From IMG/VR virus record IMGVR_UViG_3300009104_001210, positions 152,423-216,422 of that record: a stretch of 64,000 bases of DNA, one strand, 5' to 3'. Position 1 is the first letter of the stretch. Each line of letters starts with the position of its first letter. Position numbers and translations under genes: made by a program. Under the pieces are notes generated by a model that was not told the DNA's origin, searched no databases, and saw nothing but the letters and a program-made list of their open reading frames with translations. Positions 491 to 30,525 of the stretch are shown here, one piece after another.

Positions 491-491
491 A

Positions 492-7763: not shown

Positions 7764-7764
7764 A

Positions 7765-10741: not shown

Positions 10742-10747
10742 TAATAT

Positions 10748-11182: not shown

Positions 11183-11202
11183 CTAAAATTGAGGAGAATA
11201 TT

Positions 11203-11445: not shown

Positions 11446-11446
11446 T

Positions 11447-13117: not shown

Positions 13118-13820
13118 TGAATATAAATTTATTTTTATACATATCCCAAAAAATGCTGGCACTTCTTTGAGAAGTAATTTGTGTAGATTAAGTGGTATGA
13201 AACAACCGTACACTTTTGAAGAAAAAGCGTTTGCACGTTTATGTACACATACTAAACCATGTGATTGTAAAAAGGATGGCGTCTTATCAGGTAGACATAT
13301 TAGGGCTATTACATTACGAGATGAAAAAGAAATAGATAATTGGAATGATTTGTATAAGTTTGCATTTGTAAGAAATCCATATGATAGAATGGTATCATTC
13401 TGGGCATTCTATAGAAACATAGGAACATCTATGACAAATGTTAGAAGGTCAGCAGAAATGATGTCTTTTGATGATTGGGTTAAATATTTAAGAAAGAAAT
13501 CATTTGCCAAAATGGGAGAGCATCCTGAATCACTTGTTCCACCTTGGCGGTGGCCACAAGTATCTTGGATTGAAAAGGATGGTAAACAGATAATAGATTT
13601 TGTAGGTAGATACGAAAATTTACAGGAAGATTTTGAATACATATGTAAACATATTGGTTTAGATAAAGATAGTTCTTTGTGGAAAGGACATGAACAATTA
13701 GAAGAATTTAATAAATCAGGTAGATTAAAAGATTATAGACAATACTATACGGAAGAATCAAAGAAGATAGTTGGTTGGTGGTTTAAAAGAGATTTGGAAT
13801 TATTTGATTATTCCTTTTAA
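13104..13820 (+). CDS. Sulfotransfer_2 family sulfotransferase
   Basis: FIFIHIPKNAGTSL, FVRNPYDRMVS, FVGRYENLQEDF. Confidence 0.88.
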   Translation: MILNNEYKFIFIHIPKNAGTSLRSNLCRLSGMKQPYTFEEKAFARLCTHTKPCDCKKDGVLSGRHIRAITLRDEKEIDNWNDLYKFAFVRNPYDRMVSFWAFYRNIGTSMTNVRRSAEMMSFDDWVKYLRKKSFAKMGEHPESLVPPWRWPQVSWIEKDGKQIIDFVGRYENLQEDFEYICKHIGLDKDSSLWKGHEQLEEFNKSGRLKDYRQYYTEESKKIVGWWFKRDLELFDYSF

Positions 13821-13823
13821 TAT

Positions 13824-13895
13824 GGCCCCATCGTCTAATGGTGAGGACGTCGCCCTTTCAAGGCGGAGATATGGGTTCGACTCCCGTTGGGGCTA
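13824..13895 (+). tRNA. tRNA-Glu(TTC)
   Basis: Acceptor GGCCCCA/TGGGGCT; anticodon loop CT-TTC-AA; T-loop TTCGACT. Confidence 0.92.
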
Positions 13896-13896
13896 C

Positions 13897-13979
13897 GGGC
13901 AGGTAGCAAAGCGGTTAAATGCACCAAACCGTAAGTTTGGCGTCGTGAGACTACGGTGGTTCGAATCCATCCCTGCCCT
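13897..13979 (+). tRNA. tRNA-Tyr(GTA), atypical (C33, U73)
   Basis: Acceptor GGGCAGG/CCTGCCC; CCAAA-CCGTAAG-TTTGG anticodon arm; long variable arm; TTCGAAT T-loop. Confidence 0.8.
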
Positions 13980-13980
13980 C

Positions 13981-14053
13981 GGGGCTGTAGCTCATTTGGG
14001 AGAGCGCTTCCCTTGCACGGAAGAGGCAGCAGGTTCGATTCCTGTCAGCTCCA
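13981..14053 (+). tRNA. tRNA-Ala(TGC)
   Basis: GGGGCTG/CAGCTCC with G3:U70; loop CT-TGC-AC. Confidence 0.93.
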
Positions 14054-14054
14054 C

Positions 14055-14648
14055 ATGAAAAATCTATCTAGATCTGAAATAAGAGAAATAAAGAATAACC
14101 AATCAGAGTTGTATATGGAAAATGATAACTTTAAAGTTATTATACCATATACACATGATGCAGTTAAGATATATGGTAAAGGTACTAGTTGGTGTGTTTC
14201 TTGGGCAAAAGACGAAGACTATCAGTTTTATAATAAAACAGGTAAAATTCTTTTAATACTTAAAAAGAATGTTCATATTAAAGATAATACTGAAATAGAT
14301 GATGTGTGTTATAAAGTATCTATGTGGATGCCATATCAAAAATATTTGCCACTATATAGAAATTTTGGAAAAGGTGGTATAGAAGATATAGCTAAAAGAT
14401 ATGAGTCCGATAAAGAGTTATATAAAAGCGTATTAAATGGTTATGTAAATTCGGTTGATGGTATTACTATTCATAAAATAACAGCAGATTTTGAATATTA
14501 TGATGCTGATGATGCGCATTGTTTTATGCCTGTAAAGTATATAGAAGGAGATAAAGTAGTTTGCATAGATAGAGATTGGGAATTAGATTGGGAAATATTT
14601 GATAGTATAAGATATAAGTATGAATATGAGTGGCAATTTGAAGGATAA
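14055..14648 (+). CDS. hypothetical jumbo-phage protein (YGxGTxWC motif)
   Basis: Real start ATG 14055, after tRNA-Ala; KIYGKGTSWCVS. Confidence 0.6.
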   Translation: MKNLSRSEIREIKNNQSELYMENDNFKVIIPYTHDAVKIYGKGTSWCVSWAKDEDYQFYNKTGKILLILKKNVHIKDNTEIDDVCYKVSMWMPYQKYLPLYRNFGKGGIEDIAKRYESDKELYKSVLNGYVNSVDGITIHKITADFEYYDADDAHCFMPVKYIEGDKVVCIDRDWELDWEIFDSIRYKYEYEWQFEG

Positions 14649-14652
14649 TAAT

Positions 14653-14726
14653 GTGCTGGTGCCGGAGTGGTCTAACGGGGTGGGTTGCAAACCCATTATT
14701 CACAGGTTCGAATCCTGTTCAGCACT
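14653..14726 (+). tRNA. tRNA-Cys(GCA)
   Basis: GTGCTGG/TCAGCAC acceptor; loop TT-GCA-AA; U73. Confidence 0.9.
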
Positions 14727-14741
14727 CATAACTAAGGAGAA

Positions 14742-14849
14742 ATACCAATGTAATATACAACACTAAATATAAGATTAGGGTTTAGCAGTACCAATATATA
14801 AACTGTCGGTGTTTAAAGTACACCACAAAATTTAGTGTACGGATGGTAT
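14742..14849 (+). ncRNA. unclassified structured intergenic element
   Basis: Nested helices ATACCA/TGGTAT, ACACTAAAT/ATTTAGTGT, GCAGT/ACTGT, GGTGT/ACACC. Confidence 0.4.
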
Positions 14850-14879
14850 CTAAAGAGGGACGGAGGCGGGAAAAAATTA

Positions 14880-14952
14880 GCCACTTTAGCTCAGTTGGTA
14901 GAGCAGCTCACTTGTAATGAGCAGGTCCTCAGTTCGAGTCTGAGAAGTGGCT
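14880..14952 (+). tRNA. tRNA-Thr(TGT)
   Basis: GCCACTT/AAGTGGC acceptor; loop CT-TGT-AA. Confidence 0.93.
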
Positions 14953-14962
14953 CAAAAATAAT

Positions 14963-15008
14963 TAAAAAAAGGCTTGACTCGCATGGTCCAAAATGCCTAT
15001 ATTTAGGT
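14963..15008 (+). promoter_or_regulatory. early sigma70-like promoter, copy 1
   Basis: A-tract + GGC-TTGACT(14974)-N18-TATATT-TAGG; repeated four times in the window. Confidence 0.75.
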
Positions 15009-15990: not shown

Positions 15991-17157
15991 ATGAATAAAG
16001 TTGTAGTCAAAATCGAAATGTCGGGAAACCGATATAACGCTTTTGATTCTGATGGTAATAAATACACATCAGAAATTGGTACTGGAACACGTAAAAGAGC
16101 ATTTGAACAAGGTATGGCTCTTGAACGTCGTGAAGGTAAAACTGGTAAAACCTATTGGTGGAAAGTTCCAATGAGTGAATTTGAAGTATCATCAGTTCCT
16201 GAGTTTGATGTTTCTTCGGTAGAAGTACCTGAAGAACATGGTGAGATGTTGAATTTCATTCATAGTTCATATAAACTGAAACCTAAAGGTTTGGTTATGA
16301 AGGAACTGAAGTGGAAATATTTAGTTCGTTCAGGTGTTAGAGGTAAGAACATTCTAATGACAGGTCCTGCCGGATGTGGTAAAACATTGGCAGCTAAGTC
16401 GTTAGTTAACGCACTTGATCGTCCTGATTTTTACTTTAATTTGGGTGCGACTCAAGACCCTCGTTCCTCTCTAATTGGTAATACTCACTTTGATAAGTCA
16501 AAGGGTACTTACTTTTCAGAATCACTTTTTGTGAAGGCGATTTCGACGCCTAACTCAGTTATTCTGTTAGATGAGTTAAGTAGGGCTCACCCTGACGCTT
16601 GGAATATTTTGATGACAGTTCTTGATGAAGGTCAGAGATATCTAAGGTTGGATGAGGCTGACGGGCAGGCGACGATTAAAGTTGCAAGTGGTGTTACTTT
16701 TGTAGCGACAGCGAACATTGGTAATGAATACACTTCTACAAGAGTTATGGATAAAGCCTTAATGGATAGATTCATTATTGTAGAAATGGATGTTCTAAAC
16801 TCTGATGAGGAATATGGATTGTTACAATATATGTTTCCTCATGTGGATCCTGAGTTATTGAAAGCAGTTGCTGAGATAGCTCACGCATCAAGGTCAGAAT
16901 CAAAATCAGAAGCAGGTAGGATTTCAAGTGGAATTTCGACAAGAACTTCAGTTGAAATGTCTGGTCTTCTGTATGATGGTTTTGGATTAGATGAAGCGTC
17001 TGAAGTTAGTATCTATCCTCAGTATTCTGAAGATGGTGGAATGGAATCTGAAAGAACTTACATTAGACAGTTAGTACAGAAGTTCGTTTCTGATGGTAGT
17101 TCTGAAGACCTCTTTAATGAAGACGAAATAGAATCTACAGAAGATTCTGATTCTTAA
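15991..17157 (+). CDS. MoxR/CbbQ-like AAA+ ATPase
   Basis: Walker A GPAGCGKT, Walker B LLDELSRA, FVATAN, DRF. Confidence 0.88.
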   Translation: MNKVVVKIEMSGNRYNAFDSDGNKYTSEIGTGTRKRAFEQGMALERREGKTGKTYWWKVPMSEFEVSSVPEFDVSSVEVPEEHGEMLNFIHSSYKLKPKGLVMKELKWKYLVRSGVRGKNILMTGPAGCGKTLAAKSLVNALDRPDFYFNLGATQDPRSSLIGNTHFDKSKGTYFSESLFVKAISTPNSVILLDELSRAHPDAWNILMTVLDEGQRYLRLDEADGQATIKVASGVTFVATANIGNEYTSTRVMDKALMDRFIIVEMDVLNSDEEYGLLQYMFPHVDPELLKAVAEIAHASRSESKSEAGRISSGISTRTSVEMSGLLYDGFGLDEASEVSIYPQYSEDGGMESERTYIRQLVQKFVSDGSSEDLFNEDEIESTEDSDS

Positions 17158-17175
17158 TAATTGACTGACTACTAA

Positions 17176-17218
17176 AAAACAGCGCCCGAAATAAAATACA
17201 TTTTCGGGCGTTTGTTTT
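17176..17218. terminator. intrinsic terminator after the AAA ATPase
   Basis: CGCCCGAAA/TTTCGGGCG stem flanked by A- and T-rich runs. Confidence 0.75.
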
Positions 17219-17296
17219 ATATTTATAGGAGACAAAGATATAAGGTAATTATAAATTAAATTAAAATATAGAATGATTTTACTCTCTCATTCCAAC

Positions 17297-17333
17297 GAGC
17301 CCGTTCCTCTTATAGAAGTTCGGGCTTTTTTTT
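17297..17333 (+). terminator. terminator-like hairpin in a leader
   Basis: GAGCCCG/CGGGCTT followed by a T-run. Confidence 0.5.
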
Positions 17334-17351
17334 AATATAAAGAGGTTTTTT

Positions 17352-18191
17352 ATGAAACAATTAATAAAAGATGTATTAGAGACTCAAGCAGCTAATCAAG
17401 TAAATCTATCATCAGATGCTGCACGTGAACAAATAGCTAATGCTATCTTAGCAAAGATAAAGAATAATAATACAGGTTGGACTTTGGATCTTAGTACTTT
17501 AGACGGCAAAGCAAAGTTAACACCCGAAGAAATAGAAGAGCAGAATTATAAAGAATTTTGGACCTGTGCAATTTGTGGTGAAGATACTTCAAAAGTAGAT
17601 TATGATTATATAGGCTCAGGGACTAATCATTTAGGCTGTGAACTAAAAACAGAGCAAGAGATAGAAGAGTTTGTTGAAGATATAGATGAGCAAGCATACG
17701 CACAGGGACGTAAAAGTAGTTATGATGGAGATTCACTTCAACAAAAAGAAGATTTTGAGAAAAGATCAACCAAAGATAGACGAAAAGGTGATAGACGAGA
17801 AAAGAATTGGGCTCAAAAGAAACATGAAGAAAAAGTTTTTGGTATTGAAGCTGAAGCATCAGCTCGTAGAACATCAAAATCATTTGAAAAAGGTGATGCG
17901 TCTTCAATAGCAACAAAAGCTTATGTAGAAATGACTGCTGATGGATTACCTCCTGGTGGAGACGCACAAGCTGTATTAGAATCGCATAAGTTAGCAGAGG
18001 AAATAGTAGATAACCAAGAAGGTAAATGGATTTATGAATCTCCTGATGGTGGTAAAACAGTTTTTCGAAGACCATTTGGTGATTATGATATGAAGAATAA
18101 AGAAGAAATAAATTGGGAAACGAAACAACCTACAGGTAGAATGTTTACTCAATTTCCATTTCCCTCAGATGAGATAGTGAAAGAGGTGTAA
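17352..18191 (+). CDS. hypothetical protein
   Basis: ORF track; GAGG RBS. Confidence 0.65.
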   Translation: MKQLIKDVLETQAANQVNLSSDAAREQIANAILAKIKNNNTGWTLDLSTLDGKAKLTPEEIEEQNYKEFWTCAICGEDTSKVDYDYIGSGTNHLGCELKTEQEIEEFVEDIDEQAYAQGRKSSYDGDSLQQKEDFEKRSTKDRRKGDRREKNWAQKKHEEKVFGIEAEASARRTSKSFEKGDASSIATKAYVEMTADGLPPGGDAQAVLESHKLAEEIVDNQEGKWIYESPDGGKTVFRRPFGDYDMKNKEEINWETKQPTGRMFTQFPFPSDEIVKEV

Positions 18192-18192
18192 A

Positions 18193-18504
18193 TTGATGGA
18201 AAGAAAATATTGGTCTGATTATGATGTGTATATTGAGATGGCACATTCCCATACAAATAGATTAGAAGTAAGTTATTCGGGTTTTATAAGATTTAAAAAA
18301 GTAAAAGAAGTAATAAGTTCTATAGCAAATACAAACCCAGACTCTAAACATTTTTTATATGAAGGAGAAATAGTGCCAAAAAAAATTAGTCAAACAGAAG
18401 CACTATCTATACTTGATAATATTTATAAAGGTAAGTGGGATAAAACCACTGCGAAATGTATAAGAGTTGCGAATCAAGTAGGAATTGATTTAAGAAAAGA
18501 ATAA
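18193..18504 (+). CDS. hypothetical protein
   Basis: ORF track. Confidence 0.55.
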   Translation: MMERKYWSDYDVYIEMAHSHTNRLEVSYSGFIRFKKVKEVISSIANTNPDSKHFLYEGEIVPKKISQTEALSILDNIYKGKWDKTTAKCIRVANQVGIDLRKE

Positions 18505-18540
18505 GCCGAAGACTTTTCTTCGGTTAAACGGAGAAGAGTT

Positions 18541-19038
18541 ATGGCTAAAAAAGTAGATGTTAAAGAATATCAATGTAAGTTAATTAAGGTTTTAGATGGA
18601 GATACTATAGATTGTTTTATTGATTTAGGTTTCAATCTGAAAACTAAAAAACGTATACGATATATGGGAATAGATACTTGGGAATCAAGAACAAGAGATT
18701 TAGAAGAAAAGGCAAAAGGTTTAAAAGCTAAAGCTCGTAATAAAGAATTATTAGAAGGTGGAGTTTTTAAACTTAAATCATTTGGTACAGGTAAGTTCGG
18801 TAGAGTGTTAGGTGAAGTGTTTGTGGATCCTGATATTGTAGGAGAACATATTCAAGAGTGCATAGTAAATGATGATAGTGATATTGATTTAGACCATGAT
18901 GGTTGGGTAAGTGTTAATGATATCTTAATCGAAGAAGGACACGCTTACGAATATCATGGTGGTAAGAAAAAAGATTTCAAAAAAGAAATCAAAGAAGAAA
19001 AAGCTAACGCTAAATTAGTTAAAGGTAATGAAGTATGA
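18541..19038 (+). CDS. staphylococcal-nuclease (thermonuclease)-like protein
   Basis: VLDGDT, RIRYMGIDTWES, KFGRVLG. Confidence 0.85.
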   Translation: MAKKVDVKEYQCKLIKVLDGDTIDCFIDLGFNLKTKKRIRYMGIDTWESRTRDLEEKAKGLKAKARNKELLEGGVFKLKSFGTGKFGRVLGEVFVDPDIVGEHIQECIVNDDSDIDLDHDGWVSVNDILIEEGHAYEYHGGKKKDFKKEIKEEKANAKLVKGNEV

Positions 19039-19280
19039 AAACATTAAAATATTTTTCAGCAACTTGGTGTGGTCCTTGTAAGGCGTTTAAACCTGTTATG
19101 AATGAAATTGCATCAGAAGGGCATTTAGTAGAATTTATTGATATAGATAGATCACAGGATGTAGCATCAAAATATGGAATTAGATCTGTACCTACTGTAA
19201 TAATAGAACAAGGTGGACAAGAAGTTGACAGATTTTCAGGTGCTTTGCCAAAACAATTAGTATTGGAGAAAATAACCTAA
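19035..19280 (+). CDS. trxA: thioredoxin
   Basis: WCGPC; IRSVPT. Confidence 0.92.
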   Translation: MKTLKYFSATWCGPCKAFKPVMNEIASEGHLVEFIDIDRSQDVASKYGIRSVPTVIIEQGGQEVDRFSGALPKQLVLEKIT

Positions 19281-19442
19281 ATGCCTAGAATTTTTGGTAA
19301 TGAAGAACCTTCGAAAACAGGTAAGAGTACAAGACAAGGAATGGGTAGAGGAACTAAGTGGGGAACTAAACCTGCTGGTAAAGGTAATAAGAAAGCATTA
19401 ACCCGTTATAAGAAAAAATATCGTGGCCAAGGAAAGAGATAA
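19281..19442 (+). CDS. small highly basic protein (53 aa)
   Basis: MPRIFGNEEPSKTGKSTRQGMGRG...KKKYRGQGKR; not in the ORF track. Confidence 0.55.
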   Translation: MPRIFGNEEPSKTGKSTRQGMGRGTKWGTKPAGKGNKKALTRYKKKYRGQGKR

Positions 19443-20151
19443 AGTCGCAAATAGTTTATGGATAGGTAAGAAATTATTACCACAAAATATAATATCTATA
19501 AAATCTTTTTTACAAAATGGATTTGATTATAACTTATATGTTTATGATGAAGTAAAAGATATTCCATCAGGAGTAAATGTTCTTGATGGTAATGATATAT
19601 TACCTGATTCTGCTATATGGTACTACGGCAAAGGATTTAATAAAGGATCACCTTCAGGTTTTTCAAATGAATTTAGATTTACTTTCCTATATGATATTGG
19701 TGGATTATGGACTGATACTGATATAGTTTTATTGAAAGAATTCAATTTAGAACAACCTTTAATTTTTATAAGTCAAGAAAATCCTGATCAAAGTATAATG
19801 GCAACTACTTCTTTAATATATTCAAAACATCCAAAATTAGAAATTTTTAAAGATGCTTTAAATGAAATAACTTTTAGAAATAAAGAAAGAATTAAACATG
19901 GAGAAACTGGTCCAGATTTACTTGATTATTTAGTAAAGAAATATCAATTAGAAGAATTTGTTTTAGGTTATAATGCGTTTTGTTCAATAGGTTGGCATGA
20001 AATAGATAAGTTAATTAATGGAACTAAACTTTCAGAAGAAGCTATAGGATTACATTTGTTTAATGCTAGATGGGAAGCTGATGGAATTGATATTGATAAT
20101 TATAGTACATCTAAATCTATTCTTACTGAATTGAAGAAAAAGTATTTATGA
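19423..20151 (+). CDS. GT32/capsular-synthesis-type glycosyltransferase
   Basis: FSNEFRF...GGLWTDTD (DxD); HGETGP. Confidence 0.75.
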   Translation: MAKERDKVANSLWIGKKLLPQNIISIKSFLQNGFDYNLYVYDEVKDIPSGVNVLDGNDILPDSAIWYYGKGFNKGSPSGFSNEFRFTFLYDIGGLWTDTDIVLLKEFNLEQPLIFISQENPDQSIMATTSLIYSKHPKLEIFKDALNEITFRNKERIKHGETGPDLLDYLVKKYQLEEFVLGYNAFCSIGWHEIDKLINGTKLSEEAIGLHLFNARWEADGIDIDNYSTSKSILTELKKKYL

Positions 20152-21101
20152 AATTAAGTAGAGAGAAAAGAAGAGAAGTAGCATTATATCAAAGTGTTTA
20201 TTTTTATGATAGGAATACAAGATTTAATACTGATATTCATCCAGATGATTTTTTTCATACAACTAAATTTAGATCTTATTTTGATGATGATAATAGAATT
20301 AACGGTATTGTTCCTATAAATAAAATAGAGCAATCTATTTTTTTTAAAGATAAATATTATTATCCTAAAACTTATATTAAAAATCCAAAGTTAGAAGGAA
20401 TTTGGTTTATTAAACCAACGGATGGGTCTTTGGGTAATGATATTGAAATAACTGATGATTTAAGTTCAGTAAAAAATAATAAAAAAGCTATTTATCAACA
20501 ATCAATTGATAATCCTTTATTACATAAAAATAAAAAAATAGATTTTAGAACTTTTTTATTATTACAAACATTTGAGGGAAAATTTAGAGCATATTTTTAT
20601 AAAGATTCTATGTTAAGATGGACAACACTTGATTATAAAAAAGATGATTTTACATTGGAACGCCAAATAACAAATTATCTTGCAAAAAGAGATGGTAAAT
20701 TTTTTGGTAATACTATGGTTAGGGCATATTCTAAACACACATATCATTATTATAAAGAGTTACATGAAACTATGAAAAATATTATTGTAGATATTTCAAA
20801 AAGTATTTTTGATAGAGTGAATAATAAAACACAAAGAAATATATTTCAATTGTTTGGTGTAGATTTTATTCCTGATGAAGATAAGAATGTTTGGTTATTA
20901 GAAATGAATGGTAATCCAGGTCCTTATTTACATTTAGATAGACCATTAACAAAACAATTAAAGAATTGGACTTTAGATATAGTTGAAGATATATTTGATT
21001 TAACAGTATATCCAATGTATTATGGAAGAAAAAAAAAGTTAGGTGAATTTGAATTAGTATTTGAAAAAGATTTACAATTTGAAAAATGGATAGAAGTATG
21101 A
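20148..21101 (+). CDS. tubulin-tyrosine-ligase (TTL/TTLL) family ATP-grasp ligase
   Basis: WFIKP..GSLG..I; QQSIDNPLL..KKIDFR; FQLFGVDF...WLLEMNGNP. Confidence 0.85.
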   Translation: MKLSREKRREVALYQSVYFYDRNTRFNTDIHPDDFFHTTKFRSYFDDDNRINGIVPINKIEQSIFFKDKYYYPKTYIKNPKLEGIWFIKPTDGSLGNDIEITDDLSSVKNNKKAIYQQSIDNPLLHKNKKIDFRTFLLLQTFEGKFRAYFYKDSMLRWTTLDYKKDDFTLERQITNYLAKRDGKFFGNTMVRAYSKHTYHYYKELHETMKNIIVDISKSIFDRVNNKTQRNIFQLFGVDFIPDEDKNVWLLEMNGNPGPYLHLDRPLTKQLKNWTLDIVEDIFDLTVYPMYYGRKKKLGEFELVFEKDLQFEKWIEV

Positions 21102-21103
21102 AT

Positions 21104-21565
21104 ATTAACAGAAAAAGAGATAGACATATAGTAGATTATTTAAATAATCATTTTTATTGTAAATTAGGTATATCAAAAGTTCATGGTATAGGAGTTTTTG
21201 CATTAAGAGATATACCTGCTGGTATTGATCCGTTTGTTTTACCTAAAAAAGATAGGTTGGTTACAGTATATAAAGCAAGTTTGAAAAATTTAGATGAGAA
21301 TATTAAAGAATGGTTAGCTGAAAAATTTATAAATGATGATAAAGTTCAAACAATTTTACTTACTGATACTTTACAAAAACAGTTTAAATACTATTTTAAT
21401 CATAATGAAAAACCAAATTTAGAGTGGAATACACCAAAACATCGCCATCCATGTATGCCACCTTGTCCAAAATGTGGCGGACAAAATTTTATTACATTAC
21501 AAGATATAAAAAAAGATGAAGAAATTTTTGTTAATTATGCTATTGACACTAATATTTATAATTGA
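21104..21565 (+). CDS. SET-domain lysine methyltransferase
   Basis: HGIGVFALRDIPAG, YFNH, DIKKDEEIFVNY; start uncertain (track gives 21086). Confidence 0.85.
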   Translation: MNRKRDRHIVDYLNNHFYCKLGISKVHGIGVFALRDIPAGIDPFVLPKKDRLVTVYKASLKNLDENIKEWLAEKFINDDKVQTILLTDTLQKQFKYYFNHNEKPNLEWNTPKHRHPCMPPCPKCGGQNFITLQDIKKDEEIFVNYAIDTNIYN

Positions 21566-21597
21566 CATATTTATACTTAGGAATATGGAGTTAATTA

Positions 21598-22932
21598 ATG
21601 ACATGGATTAATACTAAAACGGTATTCACTTGGAATACTAAGGACAAAAAGTACGAAGAAACTCTTAATGAGGGTTATGATTATACTGGTCCTACTGCTG
21701 AATGTTTTGGTTGTTTTATAGCAGGAACAGCTGTACCTACCTCAGATGTAACATATGAGTTGATAGAAAATTTAAAAGTTGGTGATACAGTACTTACAGT
21801 TAATACAAATACAAAACCATTCACATTAGAAGAAAATAAAATACTTGAAATAGCTACACCTGTTCATGAGAATATGGTTGAGATAAAATTTGATGCTAAA
21901 ATGTTCAAAGATGGTATGCCAACATATAAGTATAGTTTAGATGAAGCAAAACCATCTCCCTCTAAGATAGCAGTTGGTCCGAAGAAATTTCCAGAGTTCT
22001 GGCTTGAAGTTTCAGAACTAGATAAACTTTCTGATGATGAGAAAGAAGCAGAGTTTAATAAATATATTGACGCCACTTGGAAGGATTTAGTAAATACAAA
22101 TACATTTGATCACCCATATTTGGTAAAAAATAAAGGTTGGTGTTCATATAAACCAAGTTTAACTAAAGAAACATATAGTATGGATGTTGGTCAGCTTGAA
22201 GTTGGTGATATTTGTTATGTGCTCAATCCTGTAAGGGGAAGAAGTCCTTTTACTGAGGTAAAGATTGTTAGTATTGAAGAAAAAAATGAAGAAACCCAAA
22301 CATATAACTTAGCTAGTGTTGAAAATAATCATAATTATTTAGCTAATGGTGTATTAGTTCACAATAAAGAAAGTTTGGGTGGTGAAGATGTAACTATTTT
22401 AAGTAGTTCTGTTGACCACGCTGATGGAGAAGTACATGCTTCTATGTCAATTGATGATAAAGTTTTAGCAGCTAGTATTTCAGGTTTACCTGATACAGAT
22501 GTAGCATCAGAATTTTTATTGTGGGAATATACGGGCAGTGATATTGCTTCTCAAATTACATTAGTTACTGCTTCAGTTGATTATATTATGTCTTCTTCTC
22601 GTAACAATTGGTTAAATATTGATTGTAAAAATGGTAGATCTGATACTTTTAGAATTACACCTGGACACCCATTATTAGTTAAGAGTGAAAGTTATGGTGA
22701 GGGATATGGGCTTCCTGGTTCTACAGGATCAGCAGCACTTACAGGATCTGTTTGGTATTTTGATTATGCAGGAGACATTAATACAAATTATAAACTTTTA
22801 AGTTCTTCATTGGAAGAGGTAGACATTGAATCAATTACACCATATAGTGCGTCTGAATCGTCTAGCTTTTTTAGATTTGATATAGAACCACAGGATACAT
22901 ATTTCGTAGATCACATATTAATACATAATTAG
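21598..22932 (+). CDS. tandem Hint-domain (intein-like) autoprocessing protein
   Basis: 38-aa leader; Hint 1 CFIAGT...TFDHP...VLVHN; KE linker; Hint 2 SLGGED...TPGHP...ILIHN-stop. Confidence 0.85.
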   Translation: MTWINTKTVFTWNTKDKKYEETLNEGYDYTGPTAECFGCFIAGTAVPTSDVTYELIENLKVGDTVLTVNTNTKPFTLEENKILEIATPVHENMVEIKFDAKMFKDGMPTYKYSLDEAKPSPSKIAVGPKKFPEFWLEVSELDKLSDDEKEAEFNKYIDATWKDLVNTNTFDHPYLVKNKGWCSYKPSLTKETYSMDVGQLEVGDICYVLNPVRGRSPFTEVKIVSIEEKNEETQTYNLASVENNHNYLANGVLVHNKESLGGEDVTILSSSVDHADGEVHASMSIDDKVLAASISGLPDTDVASEFLLWEYTGSDIASQITLVTASVDYIMSSSRNNWLNIDCKNGRSDTFRITPGHPLLVKSESYGEGYGLPGSTGSAALTGSVWYFDYAGDINTNYKLLSSSLEEVDIESITPYSASESSSFFRFDIEPQDTYFVDHILIHN

Positions 22933-22939
22933 AGGTTAC

Positions 22940-23854
22940 ATGATATTAACTACTTCTTATACAAGTCCACCTGGATTTGGTCATAGAATTTTTGTTTGGG
23001 AATATCTTTATTTAATTAATCAATATAATGATTTCAAATTTGATTTAGTTTTATCCGATAGTGTTTATGAGGAAACTAAATATTTAGATTTTCCAAAAAC
23101 AAAAATAGTGTCGGATGATAGATATACTACTAAGAAATTTAGAGCGAAAAAAATCGTAGCTGAGATATTAGATAAACAATTAACTTCACACGACCATATG
23201 CTCAAAGATTGGGATTGTTGTTATTACCATAACGAAAATATTTTTATACCTGATATAGATACTCTTAGACCAATTCAAGAAATTCAAATGAAAGACAAAA
23301 AACTATTACAGAAAATAAAAGATACTGTTAAAGATTGTATTGGAATTCATGTGAGACGGGGAGATTTAAAAGATGATGGTAGTGAGAATTATAAAAAATG
23401 GTTAAATAGAGATAATAACAATTGGAGATATGCATACTTAGAAGATAATTATTATCTTACAAGATTAGAAAATCATCCAAATAAAAAATTCTATTTAAGT
23501 TCAGATGCTACATTAGAAGAATTAAAATTTATTACAGATAACTATGATGTTATTATGAGTGATGATATTTTAGGAGAAAAAAAAGAAAGAATTAAATGGG
23601 GATTTAATGACAACTATTATATGCATGGTGGTCCTAAAATAGATTTACATTCAATAGTAGATTTGATGGCACTAACATATTCTAAAAAATTTATTGCAAG
23701 TAATTCTATGTGGAGTGAATTTATTTCAAATTATAAACAAGATAGTTGGAATAATACAGATACTATTTATCCAACAAGATGTTATAAAGTTGCACCAAGA
23801 GAAGGATTATATTATTTGGATTACGGATTTCCGTCATCTATGTTACACTCATGA
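22940..23854 (+). CDS. GT11/fucosyltransferase-like glycosyltransferase
   Basis: GFGHR, IGIHVRRGD, FYLSSD, DLMAL...FIASNS. Confidence 0.7.
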   Translation: MILTTSYTSPPGFGHRIFVWEYLYLINQYNDFKFDLVLSDSVYEETKYLDFPKTKIVSDDRYTTKKFRAKKIVAEILDKQLTSHDHMLKDWDCCYYHNENIFIPDIDTLRPIQEIQMKDKKLLQKIKDTVKDCIGIHVRRGDLKDDGSENYKKWLNRDNNNWRYAYLEDNYYLTRLENHPNKKFYLSSDATLEELKFITDNYDVIMSDDILGEKKERIKWGFNDNYYMHGGPKIDLHSIVDLMALTYSKKFIASNSMWSEFISNYKQDSWNNTDTIYPTRCYKVAPREGLYYLDYGFPSSMLHS

Positions 23855-24579
23855 GTTTATATAAACATCCAATAAAATTCGATCTAGATAAATTATTAAA
23901 AGAAAAAGACTATGCTGAATCAGTAGTTACATATGATTCAGGATTTAGAAATCATTGTATATCTTTGTTAGGTAGAAAAGAAGAAGAAATGGAAGGTTGG
24001 AATCTTTATTTAGCAGAAATGAATAGGCATAGAATATGGAAAGATTATAATAGACAAGTGAATGTATTATATGATACAGAAATCTTACAAGATATTCCTT
24101 TTGATAGAAAACATTTACCTTATATGAATAGTGTATTTGATATATTTAATGAAGGAACTGAAGTTTTAGTTGCTAGATTAATTCGAAGAGAATCACATTC
24201 TTCATACGGCATACATAGAGATTATGGAAAAGGTATGGAAGAACTTGAAGATTCTAAGAAGATGATGTGGAGATTTCAGATTCCACTTATATCAAATAAA
24301 GACTGCTACTTAATTATTTTTAAAGATCATGTAGTTGACAAATGGAAAGAGTTATATGGTGAATATCAATTAGAAGATTTTTTAGATAAACCATCTGATG
24401 ATTTTCAGGTTCATCATTTAGAGGATGGTTATTTATATCACTTTAAAGTTTGGAAGTATGCACACACGGTATGGAATATGGGGGAAACAGATAGATATAC
24501 ATTAGTAGTTGATACAATACCAAATGAGTGGATAGAAAATTGGGCAAAGGAAAATTTAAATGAAGTTTTACCTTCATAA
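23851..24579 (+). CDS. 2OG-Fe(II) oxygenase (Asp/Asn beta-hydroxylase-like)
   Basis: HRD (HxD), RFQIPL, HTVWN, DRYTLVVD. Confidence 0.7.
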   Translation: MSLYKHPIKFDLDKLLKEKDYAESVVTYDSGFRNHCISLLGRKEEEMEGWNLYLAEMNRHRIWKDYNRQVNVLYDTEILQDIPFDRKHLPYMNSVFDIFNEGTEVLVARLIRRESHSSYGIHRDYGKGMEELEDSKKMMWRFQIPLISNKDCYLIIFKDHVVDKWKELYGEYQLEDFLDKPSDDFQVHHLEDGYLYHFKVWKYAHTVWNMGETDRYTLVVDTIPNEWIENWAKENLNEVLPS

Positions 24580-25528
24580 AGATATTTTATATGAAGATCA
24601 AGCGTGGAAAACTGTTAAGTTTTTATTAGATGTAAAAAAAATATCTAATGAGGTTGTAGATATGCACAATATAGAATCTATAAAGCAATTAAATGTTTCA
24701 AGTGATGATATATGTTTTGCTAGATTTGGTCATCATTTTGATGATAAGATAGCAACTAATAAAGCATATGATGTATTAACTCAAAAATTTAATAAAATAT
24801 ATCCTTCAAAAGACGCATATTATTATTATGATGATAAATTAAAGCAATATGAATTTATGTTAGAAAATGATATACCTTGTTTGAAAACATATTATGTAGG
24901 TAGTAAAGAAGAGATAGAAAAATTAAATATAAAATTTCCTATAGTTACTAAAAAAACTTGGGGGGCTGGAACTGAACAAGTTAATAAGTGGGATGATTAT
25001 GAATCTATTGTTGATAATAAAGATACTCGAAGTTGGACAGGGGGATCTATATTTCCATGTTTAGTTCAAGAATATAAAGATGTAGATTATGATATTAGAG
25101 TTAGAATTTTAAACTCTAAAGTTTTCTTTACTAAAAGAATGCACGAATTTAAAACAAAAAATAAAGATAATTTTCCATATGGTACAAAAGAGATTCTTAA
25201 AAAAGATAGAATAAAATATCATTTACCACCATATGAAGTTCCTGTAGCATTACCAATAAATGATTTAGCAGAAGTAGAAGATATTATACCTATAGTAGAA
25301 AAATTACATAAGATTCAAAATGAAAAATTGAATAGTAATTTTGTGGTGTGGGATATTCTTAGAACAAATGAAGGAATAAAAATTCTTGAATTTAGTCATG
25401 TTACAGTATATAAAAGTTTTCCACAAATTTATTATGATATAGAATATAAAGAAGCAAATAAATTAACAATAAAAAATCGTGAACATTTTTTTTATTTGTA
25501 TAACGAAATATTAAAAGGATTAATATGA
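24560..25528 (+). CDS. RimK-like ATP-grasp ligase
   Basis: DKLKQYEFM, PIVTKKTWGAG, LVQEY...YDIRV, VWDIL...ILEFS. Confidence 0.75.
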   Translation: MKFYLHKDILYEDQAWKTVKFLLDVKKISNEVVDMHNIESIKQLNVSSDDICFARFGHHFDDKIATNKAYDVLTQKFNKIYPSKDAYYYYDDKLKQYEFMLENDIPCLKTYYVGSKEEIEKLNIKFPIVTKKTWGAGTEQVNKWDDYESIVDNKDTRSWTGGSIFPCLVQEYKDVDYDIRVRILNSKVFFTKRMHEFKTKNKDNFPYGTKEILKKDRIKYHLPPYEVPVALPINDLAEVEDIIPIVEKLHKIQNEKLNSNFVVWDILRTNEGIKILEFSHVTVYKSFPQIYYDIEYKEANKLTIKNREHFFYLYNEILKGLI

Positions 25529-27090
25529 AGAAAGTTATTATAGTTGGTGGTGGATTTGCAGGTTACTTAACAGCGTTGTTTTTAAATAAAAAATTTCCTA
25601 AATTAAAAATTGATATAATAAAATCATCAGATAAAGAACAAATTTCTGCTGGAGAACAAACAGGCAAAGAACAACTACAATTGTTTTTTGAATCATTAGG
25701 AATTGAAGAAACTGAATGGTTTAGTAGAACAAAATCTTTTTTAAAAATAGGTAATTCTTTTGTTGGGTGGGGAAACCGTGAAAATTTTGATCCTCGAGTT
25801 GGTGGACCAGATGTAGTTAATCATAGTTTTGTAATGGAAAATAAATTATTACCTTTACTTAGGAATGGTGGTGGTATGAAATCCGTAAAGGATTCTATGA
25901 AATATAATGATAAGTTACATACTGAATTATATCAAAATAGTTTTTTAGAAACACCCATAGATAATACGGATGATTATATAGATAGTTTTAAAAAACACTT
26001 TAAAAATAGTTTTTTTAATAGAAAGAATAATAGAGCCATAGCTCATATGCATGATTGGTTAGAGATAGGTAAATTTATAGAAACTAAGTTTGATGATAAT
26101 GTTAAAATAATTACTGATCATATAACTGATGTGGTTGTAGATAAAAAAAATAATACTATAGAATATCTTGTTAATAAAGATAAAGAAAAGATTAAAGCAG
26201 ATCACTACGTAGATTGTACAGGTATTAGTAGAATTTTGATTTCTAAACTTAGTAAAGTTGTAGATATTAGTGATGAATATCCTGTAAATAGTGCCGTATT
26301 TGGTCCAGTAGAATATATAGATAGAACTAAAGAGATGGTGCCAACCTTATATACTACTGCTTTTAAAAATGGTTATTCATTTAAAACACCATTACAACAT
26401 AGGATAGGAACAGGATATGTCTATTCAGATAAGTATATTAGTAAAGATGAAGCAATAGATGAGATAAATGATTATTGGGATGGTAGATTTAAGTCAGATC
26501 AAGTTAATCATTTAAAATGGACTCCATCTTATGTAGTTAAACCTTTTCAGAAAAATTGTAGCGCTGTAGGATTAGCAGGACAATTTGATTGTCCAATGGA
26601 ATCTACAGTATTTACTCAGATATCAACTGCTCTTCAACAATTAGGAAATTATTTAAATAGAGATAATAAATTATTATACATGAATCGTTCTGATATAAGA
26701 GATGAAGATATGTTAAATTATTGTAATACTTGGACTGAATATACTTTTCATAATACAAGACATTTTAAACAAATGATGTTTTATACTACAAATAGAGATG
26801 ATAGCGAATTTTGGAAGAATATTAAAACACTTAATTATTCTGATATTTTTTATAAAAAATTAAGTTTCTTTTTAGACAATTCATTTGATTATATAATAGA
26901 AAATAGAAATAAGTTTCCTGATTATACTCCACCAACAAATTTTAATATTAATGAAGATAGATTTTGGAGAGTATATCAAAAAGGATTTAAAGGATATTTT
27001 GATTATATGGGAATAAGGGGTGTAGGACATAGTATGATATTAGATGTTCATAATTGGTTAATGATTCTTGCGTATAAAAAATACATTTAA
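25525..27090 (+). CDS. tryptophan-halogenase (PrnA)-like flavoprotein
   Basis: IVGGGFAG, KIGNSFVGW, YVDCTG, PLQHRIGTGYVYS, PMEST. Confidence 0.8.
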   Translation: MKKVIIVGGGFAGYLTALFLNKKFPKLKIDIIKSSDKEQISAGEQTGKEQLQLFFESLGIEETEWFSRTKSFLKIGNSFVGWGNRENFDPRVGGPDVVNHSFVMENKLLPLLRNGGGMKSVKDSMKYNDKLHTELYQNSFLETPIDNTDDYIDSFKKHFKNSFFNRKNNRAIAHMHDWLEIGKFIETKFDDNVKIITDHITDVVVDKKNNTIEYLVNKDKEKIKADHYVDCTGISRILISKLSKVVDISDEYPVNSAVFGPVEYIDRTKEMVPTLYTTAFKNGYSFKTPLQHRIGTGYVYSDKYISKDEAIDEINDYWDGRFKSDQVNHLKWTPSYVVKPFQKNCSAVGLAGQFDCPMESTVFTQISTALQQLGNYLNRDNKLLYMNRSDIRDEDMLNYCNTWTEYTFHNTRHFKQMMFYTTNRDDSEFWKNIKTLNYSDIFYKKLSFFLDNSFDYIIENRNKFPDYTPPTNFNINEDRFWRVYQKGFKGYFDYMGIRGVGHSMILDVHNWLMILAYKKYI

Positions 27091-27120: not shown

Positions 27121-27261
27121 ATGATAGATACAGAAAAATTTATAAAAAACCTACATAAAGAAATAAAACGTAGAAAAGAACGTAAACAACGTGTATTCAA
27201 TACTATTTATTTAGTAGGAGTGTTTATCTTTGATTTTATAATAGACACAGGAGAATGGATA
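27121..27261 (+). CDS. small membrane protein
   Basis: MIDTEKFIKNLHKEIKRRKERKQRVFNTIYLVGVFIF...; not in the ORF track. Confidence 0.4.
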
Positions 27262-27596
27262 TGAAAAAATATTTATTAATGTTTGCTTTTATTTTACCAT
27301 TAATGGCTCAAGAAGTTGAAGTTAAAGAAACAGATGGTAAGACAGAAGTTACCGTTAAGAAACAACACGATAAGAAAAAATGGGATCGTGGCAGTATGAA
27401 GCGCGGTATGGACAGACGTGATAAACGAATGATGATGGCTAAACGAAAAAAGATGCAAAGGAAGAGATTCTGGCGCTCAGCAGTTCGTGTAGTTGTTATT
27501 GGTGGAGTAGCTTATTATGTTGGATATACTCAAGGCCAAAAGCATGAACATAAACGTGGTTGGAATAAAAAACCATATATGGGTGATAGAAAATAA
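27255..27596 (+). CDS. secreted/membrane basic protein
   Basis: Signal peptide-like N-terminus; C-terminal hydrophobic segment. Confidence 0.55.
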   Translation: MDMKKYLLMFAFILPLMAQEVEVKETDGKTEVTVKKQHDKKKWDRGSMKRGMDRRDKRMMMAKRKKMQRKRFWRSAVRVVVIGGVAYYVGYTQGQKHEHKRGWNKKPYMGDRK

Positions 27597-30048: not shown

Positions 30049-30525
30049 ATGACTAAAATCGCATTTCGTACAAACATCCCTTACTTCGATAGGGATTCTT
30101 TTTTGACCCCGTTTGATAAAATATTCGATCAAATGGTTGAAACTCATTATCCAGAAATAACAAAATCCGTTGGTGTAAAACCATATGGTAATACTGCATA
30201 TCCAAAAGTTAACGTATATGAATACGACGACAAAGTGGGTATTGTAGCAGAGATTCCTGGATTAAACAAGAAACAACTCAAAGTAGATGTTGAAGATGGA
30301 ACTCTTACAATATCTGGAGATAAACACGGTTCTTTAATGAAAGATCAAGGTGCTAGAGTTATCCGTAAGGAATTAAAGCAATCTTCATTTAAAAGACAAT
30401 TTGAATTGGGTGAGTTGTTAGATGGTGAGAACATTTCAGCCAATTTTAAGGATGGAATTTTATCTGTCTCAATTCCTAAGATGGAGCAGGAACAACCGAA
30501 GAAGACTACTGTAAAAATATCCTAA
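30049..30525 (+). CDS. Hsp20/alpha-crystallin small heat-shock protein
   Basis: YPKVNVYE, AEIPG, LTISG, SSFKRQF, ANFKDGILSVSIPK. Confidence 0.95.
   Translation: MTKIAFRTNIPYFDRDSFLTPFDKIFDQMVETHYPEITKSVGVKPYGNTAYPKVNVYEYDDKVGIVAEIPGLNKKQLKVDVEDGTLTISGDKHGSLMKDQGARVIRKELKQSSFKRQFELGELLDGENISANFKDGILSVSIPKMEQEQPKKTTVKIS

What the first reader, a model, noticed from the sequence alone, without database searches (positions are those of the whole stretch)
19423..27090. Eight-gene modification cluster surrounding an autoprocessing precursor
GT32, a TTL ligase, a SET methyltransferase, the tandem-Hint protein, a GT11-like enzyme, a 2OG hydroxylase, a RimK ligase and a halogenase-like oxidase are contiguous and mostly overlapping. 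All are tailoring enzymes for proteins, peptides or glycans. The layout resembles a RiPP-like or virion-decoration pathway acting on a shared substrate, possibly the Hint-released peptide (inference).
Basis: inference. Interest (0 to 1): 0.75.

Follow-up and report, generated by a model that had tools for sequence, protein, structure and literature searches.

The report
Phage self-cleaving peptide tailoring island
A marine jumbo phage carries a tight block of eight protein- and sugar-modifying enzyme genes built around a gene that fuses a small conserved peptide to self-cleaving Hint domains; dozens of related phages keep three of these genes together, which points to an undescribed way of making a modified (glyco)peptide, though no function has been shown.

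Summary
The eight ORFs exist as described and all eight family calls hold. Four are above curated thresholds (TTL, SET, Hint, halogenase). Four rest on motifs, profiles or folds (GT32, fucosyltransferase-like, AspH-like, RimK-like).

Across 87 marine contigs, only GT32, the Hint gene and the RimK-like ATP-grasp ligase form a conserved core. TTL, SET and the fucosyltransferase-like gene are kept in one sub-lineage. The AspH-like gene is rare, and the halogenase was found only in this phage and its strains.

The ancestral Hint gene is a conserved 20- or 37-residue N-peptide, a Gly-rich linker and a special Hint domain ("Hint B"). Hint B has an invariant Ser1, a TxxH motif, a terminal His-Asn that ends the protein, and a unique invariant 25-residue insert. 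The window's first Hint ("Hint A", a Cys...His-Asn-Lys bacterial intein-like domain) is one of 0-2 optional modules inserted exactly at the peptide/Hint B junction.

My best reading (confidence about 0.45) is a self-processing precursor whose peptide, or Hint B itself, is glycosylated and ligated by the core enzymes and further tailored by lineage-specific ones. Chemistry and biological role are inferred, not shown. I rate it a new variant of known kinds, with interest about 0.7.

The parts
19423..20151 (+). g1: GT32-like retaining glycosyltransferase with a DxD motif. Conserved core gene.
   Evidence: Pfam score is 22.7 bits against a cut-off of 23. DTD is invariant. The AF2 model matches A4GALT with TM 0.73. 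The closest solved structures are protein-O-glycosylating GT-A enzymes (YeGT, PaToxG, SetA, glycogenin). Homologs at 1e-81 to 1e-90 lie next to Hint genes.
20148..21101 (+). g2: tubulin-tyrosine-ligase-family ATP-grasp ligase. Sub-lineage accessory gene.
   Evidence: Pfam TTL 3.6e-26 and PDB TTL 1e-11. Present in 13 of 21 loci with the long N-peptide and 1 of 37 with the short one, always upstream of the Hint gene.
21086..21565 (+). g3: SET-domain methyltransferase. Accessory gene.
   Evidence: Pfam SET 4e-10 with motifs present. Nine loci carry it, always immediately upstream of the Hint gene, at 27-38% identity.
21598..21711 (+). N-peptide (residues 1-38 of P0001), long class, W-I-N-T-K type, ending in Gly38 just before Cys39.
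   Evidence: Conserved in 17 distinct long-class sequences. The AF2 model predicts a beta-hairpin at residues 4-28.
21712..22365 (+). Hint A (residues 39-256): a bacterial intein-like module with Cys39, T169-x-x-H172 and H255-N256. The next residue is Lys257. It carries an insert of about 65 residues that is polymorphic between strains.
   Evidence: Pfam, alignment A1 and Foldseek, where the best matches are the BIL2 and BIL domains 6y75 and 2lwy. The module is optional, with 0-2 copies in relatives, always at the peptide/Hint B junction. An indel at 21928-22082 is seen in run X5.
22372..22929 (+). Hint B (residues 259-444): the conserved Hint domain of the family. It has an invariant Ser259, T354-x-x-H357, an invariant insert G-L-P-D-T-D...L-L-W-E-Y-T-G-S, and H443-N444 as the last residues of the protein.
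   Evidence: Alignments A1 and A2. hhalign against Hint A gives 98.2% probability. Ser is conserved in 59 of 60 distinct sequences. The family has only about 16 clusters at 50% identity.
22940..23854 (+). g5: fucosyltransferase-superfamily enzyme (GT11/GT23/GT65-like). Sub-lineage accessory gene.
   Evidence: The HxRRGD motif is invariant. Weak GT11 Pfam hits occur in 7 of 10 homologs, and Atlas features agree. It follows the Hint gene in 14 of 21 long-class loci. GDP-mannose 4,6-dehydratase lies nearby in relatives.
23851..24579 (+). g6: Asp/Asn beta-hydroxylase-like 2OG/Fe(II) oxygenase. Sporadic accessory gene.
   Evidence: Pfam is sub-threshold. HxD...H is present. Atlas structure matches give TM 0.6-0.72. 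Homologs occur in only 3 of 87 loci.
24560..25528 (+). g7: RimK-like ATP-grasp carboxylate-amine ligase. Conserved core gene.
   Evidence: Pfam is sub-threshold. The profile hits ATP-grasp PDB entries at 1.7e-5. Atlas neighbours are RimK clusters. It lies downstream of the Hint gene in 22 of 24 loci with enough DNA.
25525..27090 (+). g8: flavin-dependent halogenase family member. Lineage-specific accessory gene.
   Evidence: Pfam 2e-58, phrog_2928 and PDB halogenases including VirX1. GxGxxG, a Lys in S-F-L-K-I-G and E-S-T are present, but W-x-W-x-I-P reads Y-S-F-K-T-P. No homolog in 87 related loci. Present in strain variant X5.
19035..19280 (+). Thioredoxin gene: backbone gene marking the upstream edge of the island.
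   Evidence: Pfam. SNase and Trx precede the island in 12-13 related loci.
27255..27596 (+). Conserved backbone ORF marking the downstream edge of the island.
   Evidence: Its homologs directly follow the island in 7 related loci.

Best explanation
**What it is.** The region is a hypervariable tailoring island of a 216-kb marine myovirus, built around a conserved three-gene module. The module is a GT32-like glycosyltransferase (g1), a self-processing precursor (g4) and a RimK-like ATP-grasp ligase (g7).

**The precursor.** Its ancestral form is a small conserved N-peptide, a Gly-rich linker and a specialised Hint domain (Hint B) that ends the protein. In the window, one bacterial intein-like module (Hint A) has been inserted exactly at the peptide/Hint B junction.

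**Proposed mechanism (inferred).**
1. Cys39 of Hint A and Ser259 of Hint B make (thio)ester intermediates at their N-terminal junctions.
2. Asn256 cyclisation frees Hint A.
3. The 38-residue N-peptide is therefore detached, either with a free or activated C-terminus or after BIL-type ligation to Lys257.
4. Hint B ends up with a free N-terminal Ser.
5. The core enzymes act on this precursor or its products. GT32 starts O-glycosylation and the ATP-grasp forms an amide at a carboxylate exposed by cleavage. The residue before the cleavage site is mostly Glu or Asp after a Gly run.
6. Lineage-specific enzymes add further marks. In the window these are TTL (amino-acid ligation), SET (Lys methylation), a fucosyltransferase-like enzyme, an AspH-like hydroxylase and a halogenase. 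The peptide has two conserved Trp residues.

**Likely purpose (weakest step).** A decorated (glyco)peptide or protein used on the virion or its fibres. In most relatives the module lies directly beside tail-fibre genes, other Hint-bearing proteins and further glycosyltransferases.
For: **Shown**
- Gene families.
- Core synteny: 37 of 44 loci have GT32 upstream and 22 of 24 have the ATP-grasp downstream. Core homologs reach 1e-42 to 1e-90.
- The N-peptide falls into two strongly conserved classes. It is joined to Hint B directly through variable Gly linkers, or through 1-2 Hint A modules at the same point.
- Ser1 is invariant, and TxxH and the terminal HN are conserved.
- The window's Hint A has all the residues needed for thioester formation and Asn cyclisation. 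Its best structural matches are BIL domains.
- Accessory enzyme sets track the N-peptide class. For the long class, the fucosyltransferase-like gene occurs in 14 of 21 loci and TTL in 13 of 21. For the short class, the counts are 0 of 37 and 1 of 37.
- TTL and SET hold the slot just upstream of the precursor at about 35% identity, in both genome backbones.
- TTL, SET, AspH and RimK are families whose characterised members act on proteins (established knowledge).
- The nearest solved structures to g1 are protein-O-glycosyltransferases.
- Fibre adjacency and Hint paralogs flanking a GT-B enzyme.
- The phage recurs in seawater metagenomes of at least 12 studies.
- Short contigs of the Hint gene occur in two metatranscriptome libraries.
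Against: - No cleavage, modification or interaction has been observed. The complex prediction of g7 with the precursor gave no answer.
- Eight loci lack the N-peptide but keep GT32 and the ATP-grasp, and sometimes TTL or SET. No separate peptide gene was found in them.
- Hint B is much more conserved than self-cleavage requires, and it carries an invariant insert of unknown role. Hint B itself may therefore be the functional product.
- Many accessory genes in relatives are sugar-nucleotide enzymes (DegT-like, GDP-mannose dehydratase, CMP-sugar synthase-like, GT7). These fit glycan building on any acceptor.
- Canonical GT32 enzymes act on glycans and glycolipids.
- The link between accessory sets and peptide class may simply reflect shared descent.
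- RNA-library contigs do not prove transcription.
Confidence: 0.45

Rival explanations
1. It is a virion or fibre glycosylation island with no peptide product. The glycosyltransferases and sugar-tailoring enzymes build a glycan on structural proteins. The Hint proteins are self-removing C-terminal modules or decoration proteins, analogous to the S74 intramolecular chaperones of fibres. The N-peptide is only a pro-segment.
For: - In most relatives the module directly follows a tail-fibre gene with a Peptidase_S74 domain, a Hint paralog and a GT-B enzyme. It is followed by GT7+LamG enzymes, sulfotransferases and sugar-nucleotide enzymes.
- The window's own genome has these partners at its start, at positions 154-15008.
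- The phage has further sugar islands.
Against: - It does not explain the strong conservation of a 20-37-residue N-peptide, nor its flexible tether.
- In the window the island is more than 40 kb from the fibre genes along the record.
- The window's accessory genes are mostly protein-directed families (TTL, SET, AspH-like, RimK-like).
Confidence: 0.25
2. Hint B is the functional product. All gene variants converge on a free Hint B with an N-terminal Ser. The N-peptide and the Hint A modules are a removable pro-segment and selfish inserts. GT32 and the ATP-grasp modify or cooperate with Hint B, whose invariant insert is the working surface.
For: - Hint B is the only part present in every homolog. 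It has 62% mean column identity and an invariant 25-residue insert.
- Variants without the N-peptide keep the core genes.
- Hint A copy number varies from 0 to 2, and one lineage has a Hint A without its Cys.
- The family is small and sharply separated from other Hint domains.
Against: - The N-peptide is itself strongly conserved in two classes and always starts the protein.
- No known Hint domain has a function after cleavage (own knowledge).
Confidence: 0.18
3. There is no shared pathway. The eight genes are independent accessory genes that accumulate in a hypervariable slot of the genome. Only the adjacency of the three core genes is meaningful.
For: - Halogenase and AspH-like genes are absent from nearly all relatives.
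- The slot's content changes from locus to locus.
- The phage carries many other auxiliary genes nearby, including GS-like, PurF-like and GMP-reductase-like genes and sulfotransferases.
- Cyanophages have unrelated halogenase/2OG clusters (PMC7824862).
Against: - What replaces a tailoring gene is always another tailoring gene.
- TTL and SET keep a fixed position next to the precursor at about 35% identity in two backbones.
- The genes overlap, consistent with translational coupling.
Confidence: 0.12

Closest known systems
Bacterial intein-like (BIL) domains, including BIL2 of the Tetrahymena BUBL locus (PDB 6y75, 6tmm) and the Clostridium thermocellum BIL (2lwy)
   Same: Hint A has Cys1, TxxH and a C-terminal His-Asn, with a non-nucleophilic residue after it. 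These are its best structural matches (E 2e-9). BIL2 releases and conjugates a small upstream domain through a Lys-epsilon isopeptide without ATP (PMC8616854). Here the residue after Hint A is Lys in at least 90% of homologs.
   Different: Here the BIL module sits between a 38-residue peptide and a second Hint domain, not between ubiquitin-like domains. The setting is a phage. An ATP-grasp ligase is a conserved partner. Isopeptide formation is untested.
Hedgehog/Hog C-terminal autoprocessing domains
   Same: Hint B is a C-terminal Hint with no C-extein. It can therefore only cleave, or transfer, what lies upstream. Hedgehog domains appear among the fold matches (1at0, 6tyy).
   Different: The nucleophile is Ser, not Cys. 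The terminal His-Asn is retained. A unique 25-residue invariant insert replaces any sterol-recognition region. The cargo is a 20-38-residue peptide. No transfer to an acceptor is known.
RiPP biosynthetic clusters (for example ATP-grasp graspetides, or NHLP/Nif11 precursors with peptide halogenases and AspH-type hydroxylases)
   Same: A gene-encoded peptide lies next to a changing set of tailoring enzymes: ATP-grasp, halogenase, 2OG hydroxylase, radical SAM, methyltransferase, sulfotransferase and glycosyltransferase. AspH-like relatives fused to Nif11 occur among the structural neighbours of g6.
   Different: The core peptide is N-terminal. Its 'follower' is a self-cleaving Hint domain rather than a leader removed by a protease. 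No RRE domain or protease is present. The host is a phage. A full-text search for 'Hint domain' together with 'RiPP' and 'precursor peptide' listed no paper holding 'Hint domain' among its top 12.
Ubiquitin/Pup-type peptide tagging (established knowledge)
   Same: A small peptide has a Gly-rich tail ending mostly in Glu or Asp that is exposed by processing. It is paired with a carboxylate-amine ligase.
   Different: The ligase is an ATP-grasp enzyme, not PafA or an E1-E3 system. No target is known. This is resemblance only.
Phage and giant-virus virion glycosylation gene islands, and the cyanophage halogenase/2OG cluster described in PMC7824862
   Same: Clusters of glycosyltransferases, sugar-tailoring enzymes, 2OG oxygenases and a halogenase occur in large phages, often near structural genes.
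   Different: Those clusters have no Hint-fused peptide gene, TTL or SET. The carbamoyltransferase and HemK core of the cyanophage cluster is absent here.

Membership tests
Canonical intein (Hint A, residues 39-256) | N-terminal Cys, Ser or Thr nucleophile | tested here: met
   Cys39 is nearly invariant in alignment A3.
Canonical intein (Hint A) | Block B TxxH and C-terminal His-Asn | tested here: met
   T169-x-x-H172 and H255-N256 are present.
Canonical intein (Hint A) | Cys, Ser or Thr immediately after the C-terminal Asn | tested here: not met
   Lys257 follows, and it is Lys in at least 90% of homologs. Hint A is therefore BIL-like and not a canonical intein.
Canonical intein (Hint A) | Insertion in a conserved site of a host protein that is restored by splicing | tested here: inconclusive
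   Hint A is inserted exactly at the N-peptide/Hint B junction, which is contiguous in homologs without Hint A. Splicing itself is not testable here.
Hint superfamily (Hint B, residues 259-444) | Homology to Hint domains with nucleophile, TxxH and terminal motif | tested here: met
   hhalign against Hint A gives 98.2% probability, E 6e-14. Ser259 is conserved in 59 of 60 distinct sequences. T354-x-x-H357 and H443-N444 are present.
Hedgehog-type autoprocessing domain (Hint B) | Cleavage at the N-terminal junction with transfer to a nucleophile | not testable with these tools
   Only the architecture fits: there is no C-extein and the protein ends at His-Asn.
RiPP cluster | Precursor peptide gene co-located with tailoring enzymes across relatives | tested here: met
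   Shown by the synteny of 87 loci.
RiPP cluster | The peptide is modified by the neighbouring enzymes and released as a mature product | not testable with these tools
   This needs mass spectrometry. The complex prediction gave no answer.
GT32 (g1) | Gly_transf_sug domain with DxD, and a GT-A fold like A4GALT or Och1 | tested here: met
   DTD is invariant. TM 0.73 to A4GALT. Pfam scores 22.7 bits, just under the cut-off of 23.
TTL family (g2) | Pfam TTL above the gathering score | tested here: met
   92.5 bits against a cut-off of 20.1. PDB TTL and TTLL6 hits.
SET methyltransferase (g3) | SET domain above threshold with the NH..PN and C-terminal Tyr motifs | tested here: met
   40.5 bits against a cut-off of 22.4. 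The motifs are visible in the translation.
GT11/fucosyltransferase superfamily (g5) | HxRRGD nucleotide-sugar motif and a family profile match | tested here: inconclusive
   The motif is invariant. Pfam GT11 hits are all below the cut-off (best 5.7e-4, 7 of 10 members). Atlas feature neighbours are NodZ, FUT8, O-FucT and GT11. No structure was predicted.
Asp/Asn beta-hydroxylase-type 2OG oxygenase (g6) | HxD...H triad and family fold | tested here: met
   H122-x-D124 and H205 are present. Atlas structure matches give TM 0.6-0.72. Pfam is below the cut-off.
RimK-like ATP-grasp (g7) | ATP-grasp fold and RimK profile | tested here: inconclusive
   RimK scores 19 bits against a cut-off of 21. The profile hits ATP-grasp PDB entries at 1.7e-5. 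Atlas neighbours are RimK clusters. The subfamily is not resolved.
Flavin-dependent Trp halogenase (g8) | Family profile, GxGxxG, and catalytic Lys and Glu | tested here: met
   Pfam 2e-58. The motifs were read by eye in the translation.
Flavin-dependent Trp halogenase (g8) | WxWxIP motif | tested here: not met
   It reads Y-S-F-K-T-P. Substrate and halogenating activity remain uncertain.

The most novel reading that the evidence does not exclude
This is a previously undescribed class of ribosomal (glyco)peptide or peptide tag made by phages. A conserved 20-38-residue peptide is fused to a dedicated Ser-nucleophile Hint domain. The Hint domain acts as a self-cleaving follower and possibly as a transfer platform. 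An ATP-grasp ligase and a GT32 enzyme are the fixed partners, and a swappable set of tailoring enzymes surrounds them. BIL modules are nested exactly at the scissile junction.
Probability: 0.3. Interest if true: 0.9.

Novelty: new variant of a known kind. Interest (0 to 1): 0.7.

Why it matters
- **New chemistry.** If the precursor self-cleaves and its peptide or Hint domain is tailored by its neighbours, this adds a new maturation logic to ribosomal natural products and protein tagging. That logic is autoproteolytic Hint release in place of a leader protease.
- **A useful natural case.** It would be an example of Hint domains nested at another Hint's active junction.
- **Phage biology.** It would assign a role to TTL and SET enzymes in a phage, where such families are unusual in my experience (the literature search found no report).
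- **Scale.** The module recurs in dozens of marine phage contigs, and this phage occurs in seawater metagenomes of many studies. The product may therefore matter for virion surface properties or phage-host interplay in the ocean.
- **Tools.** Ser-Hint and BIL modules with defined junctions are also candidate protein-engineering tools.

Tried and rejected
- **PHROGs.** Only the halogenase has a family.
- **Cultured phage records.** The 7.7-kb DNA stretch, the Hint protein and TTL found nothing. GT32, the ATP-grasp and the GT-B enzyme matched mainly one uncultured 484-kb phage, LR756508. That phage has a Hint paralog, GT-B and GT32 close together but no peptide-Hint B gene in the 28-kb stretch examined.
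- **Viral-contig scans.** They returned only an identical contig and one distant locus.
- **Genome-contig scan.** It gave only weak generic Hint hits in Nannocystis, so there is no host clue.
- **PDB profile searches.** The searches for Hint B and g5 were empty.
- **Complex prediction.** The run of the ATP-grasp with the precursor gave no answer and is not used as evidence.
- **Separate N-peptide gene.** None was found in loci that lack the peptide, nor a second copy in the genome.
- **'TTL and SET act only on the long N-peptide'.** Rejected as stated, because they also occur with short-peptide and peptide-less precursors.
- **Promoter and terminator scan.** No better than shuffles.
- **Literature searches.** Searches on Hint with RiPP or phage, and on TTL or SET in phages, listed no description of this module.

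Full report
**Setting.** The window is the last 64 kb of a 216,422-bp IMG/VR virus record that CheckV rates complete. GC content is about 30% and nearly all genes lie on the + strand. It carries five tRNAs and a myovirus baseplate and tail module at 48-64 kb. The baseplate wedge protein is 43-50% identical to those of Flavobacterium phage immuto, 'Microcystis phage Mel-JY01' and a 484-kb uncultured phage. A Bacteroidota host is therefore a weak guess. Near-identical DNA occurs in seawater metagenomes of at least 12 studies.

**Observation.**
- TTL, SET, Hint and the halogenase pass curated Pfam thresholds (PDB support).
- GT32 is a hair below threshold. It has an invariant DTD motif, and its AF2 model (pLDDT 82) superposes on the GT32 enzyme A4GALT at TM 0.73. 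The closest solved structures are protein-O-glycosylating GT-A enzymes such as YeGT, PaToxG, SetA and glycogenin. No GT32 entry appeared among the listed PDB matches, so this does not settle the acceptor.
- ORF 22940 has an invariant HxRRGD motif, which I recall as the fucosyltransferase signature. Seven of 10 homologs give weak GT11 hits, and its Atlas neighbours are NodZ, FUT8, O-FucT and GT11. In relatives, a GDP-mannose 4,6-dehydratase sits two genes downstream.
- ORF 23851 has an HxD...H triad and AspH-like structure matches.
- ORF 24560 is an ATP-grasp enzyme nearest to RimK.
- The halogenase has GxGxxG, the Lys and the Glu, but a degenerate WxWxIP motif.

**The Hint gene.** A homolog search and alignment showed three things: a variable N-terminus, one or two Cys...His-Asn modules, and an invariant C-terminal region of about 185 residues that ends the protein in His-Asn.
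- Profile comparison shows this C-terminal region is itself a Hint domain (98.2% probability, E 6e-14). It carries a 25-residue insert that is the most conserved stretch of the protein.
- 'Tandem Hint' is therefore correct.
- The AF2 model (pLDDT 71) matches BIL domains best, then mini-inteins and Hedgehog.

**The decisive comparison.** A metagenome scan with the Hint B profile gave 80 loci.
- Many homologs are only about 190 residues. They consist of a conserved N-peptide, a Gly-rich linker of variable length and Hint B.
- The N-peptide comes in a short class of about 20 residues with a W-G-G-K motif and a long class of about 37 residues with a W-I-N-T-K motif.
- Hint A modules, in 0, 1 or 2 copies, are always inserted at the same point, between the peptide and the Ser that starts Hint B.
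- That Ser is conserved in 59 of 60 distinct sequences. It lines up with Cys1 of ordinary Hint domains by eye. The residue before it is mostly Glu or Asp.
- After Hint A the next residue is Lys, not a nucleophile, so Hint A is BIL-like and not a canonical intein.
- Eight loci have no N-peptide at all, and no separate peptide gene was found in them.
- One lineage has a Hint A without its Cys, next to a B12/radical SAM gene.
- In 1.8 billion representatives the Hint B family proper has only about 16 clusters, followed by a sharp drop to generic Hint domains.

**Synteny.**
- GT32 lies upstream in 37 of 44 informative loci, and the ATP-grasp lies downstream in 22 of 24.
- Two genome contexts exist. 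In most relatives the order is tail fibre (S74 chaperone), a Hint paralog, a GT-B enzyme, GT32, the precursor, 0-3 variable genes, the ATP-grasp, a protein of about 100 residues, GT7+LamG enzymes and more sugar enzymes.
- In the window's lineage the island lies between SNase/thioredoxin and the homolog of ORF 27255.
- The fibre, two Hint paralogs, GT-B and three GT7+LamG genes lie at the start of the same genome record.
- TTL (13 of 21), the fucosyltransferase-like gene (14 of 21), a small 2OG oxygenase and a Sulfotransfer_1 enzyme go with the long peptide.
- Short-peptide loci carry DegT-like fragments, Sulfotransfer_4 and unknown genes instead.
- TTL and SET stay immediately upstream of the precursor at 27-39% identity and also occur in a fibre-adjacent, short-peptide locus (L077). 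This argues for long co-residence, not recent transfer.
- AspH-like homologs occur in 3 loci and the halogenase in none. A strain variant from another study does keep the halogenase, and it shows an indel in the Hint A insert.

**Interpretation.**
- Shown: the families, the architecture and the synteny.
- Inferred from Hint chemistry (established knowledge; BIL2 details from PMC8616854): Cys39 and Ser259 form (thio)esters, and Asn256 cyclisation frees Hint A. The N-peptide is released or transferred, and Hint B is left with a free N-terminal Ser.
- Inferred from synteny and family properties: GT32 and the ATP-grasp act on the precursor or its products, and the window's other five enzymes are lineage-specific tailoring steps.
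- The peptide offers matching residue types, with conserved Trp, Lys, Tyr, Thr, Asp and Glu. This is only a correspondence.
- The purpose is the weakest step. Fibre adjacency and the sugar genes suggest virion decoration.

**Rivals.** The alternatives I weighed are a glycan island with no peptide product, Hint B as the real product, and unrelated accessory genes. The peptide-less variants and the extreme conservation of Hint B keep the second rival alive.

**Evidence that gave nothing.** The complex prediction gave no answer. The RNA-library contigs show presence, not transcription. Literature searches listed no description of this module. The jumbo-phage survey describes an unrelated cyanophage halogenase/2OG cluster and sporadic ATP-grasp peptide ligases.

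**Verdict.** The unit is a three-gene core with swappable accessories, not a fixed eight-gene pathway. The precursor's architecture is new and makes a clear, testable prediction.

Noticed in passing
G000:C1:154-15008 (L022), the start of the same virus record: The record starts with a tail fibre carrying a Peptidase_S74 chaperone. It is followed by two Hint paralogs (an N-domain, a Cys...His-Asn Hint and a short tail) flanking a GT-B-like enzyme. Then come three GT7+LamG enzymes, an SDR epimerase and a radical-SAM-like protein. In most relatives this block is contiguous with the GT32/precursor/ATP-grasp module.
   Followed up: partly
window 21928-22082: There is a strain-level indel inside the low-confidence insert of Hint A. 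A variant from another study replaces 153 nt with 27 nt, which matches the 402-residue homolog P0003.
   Followed up: partly
window 1047-10741: This stretch holds two glutamine-synthetase-like amidoligases (1047, 4564), a glucosamine-6-P isomerase/lactonase-like gene (5801) and a DUF6071 gene (6487). It also holds a PurF-like amidophosphoribosyltransferase (7765) and a GMP-reductase/IMPDH-like gene (9701). It is a second block of auxiliary metabolic or ligase genes.
   Followed up: no
window 11910-12653 and 13095-13820: Two Sulfotransfer_2 paralogs lie here. Their homologs occur in the fibre-adjacent islands of relatives (L006).
   Followed up: no
window 13824-14953: A cluster of five tRNA genes: Glu-TTC, Tyr-GTA, Ala-TGC, Cys-GCA and Thr-TGT.
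   Followed up: no
window 15991-19442 and 30049-30525: Backbone genes conserved with relatives: a CobS/MoxR-like AAA ATPase, two unknown genes, a staphylococcal-nuclease-like gene, thioredoxin and a small conserved ORF at 19281-19442 that overlaps the GT32 start. An Hsp20 gene lies further downstream.
   Followed up: partly
G000:C1:39842-49309: A further sugar island in the same genome. It holds two SDR epimerase/dehydratases, a paralog of the fucosyltransferase-like g5 (42336-43487), a homolog of an unknown gene found between the Hint gene and the ATP-grasp in relatives, and a radical-SAM-like gene.
   Followed up: no
L105 (LR756508.1:118000-146000): A 484-kb uncultured phage keeps a Hint paralog, GT-B, two unknown genes and GT32 close together. 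No peptide-Hint B gene was found in this 28-kb stretch, and its ATP-grasp homolog is far away.
   Followed up: partly
L006, L043, L055, L085, L087: In this lineage Hint A has Glu in place of Cys1 and a different short N-terminus. A B12-binding radical SAM gene always lies directly upstream.
   Followed up: no
window 21750-21903 and 22530-22772: Short contigs at 99% identity or more occur in two seawater metatranscriptome libraries. They show presence only, because DNA carry-over is not excluded.
   Followed up: partly
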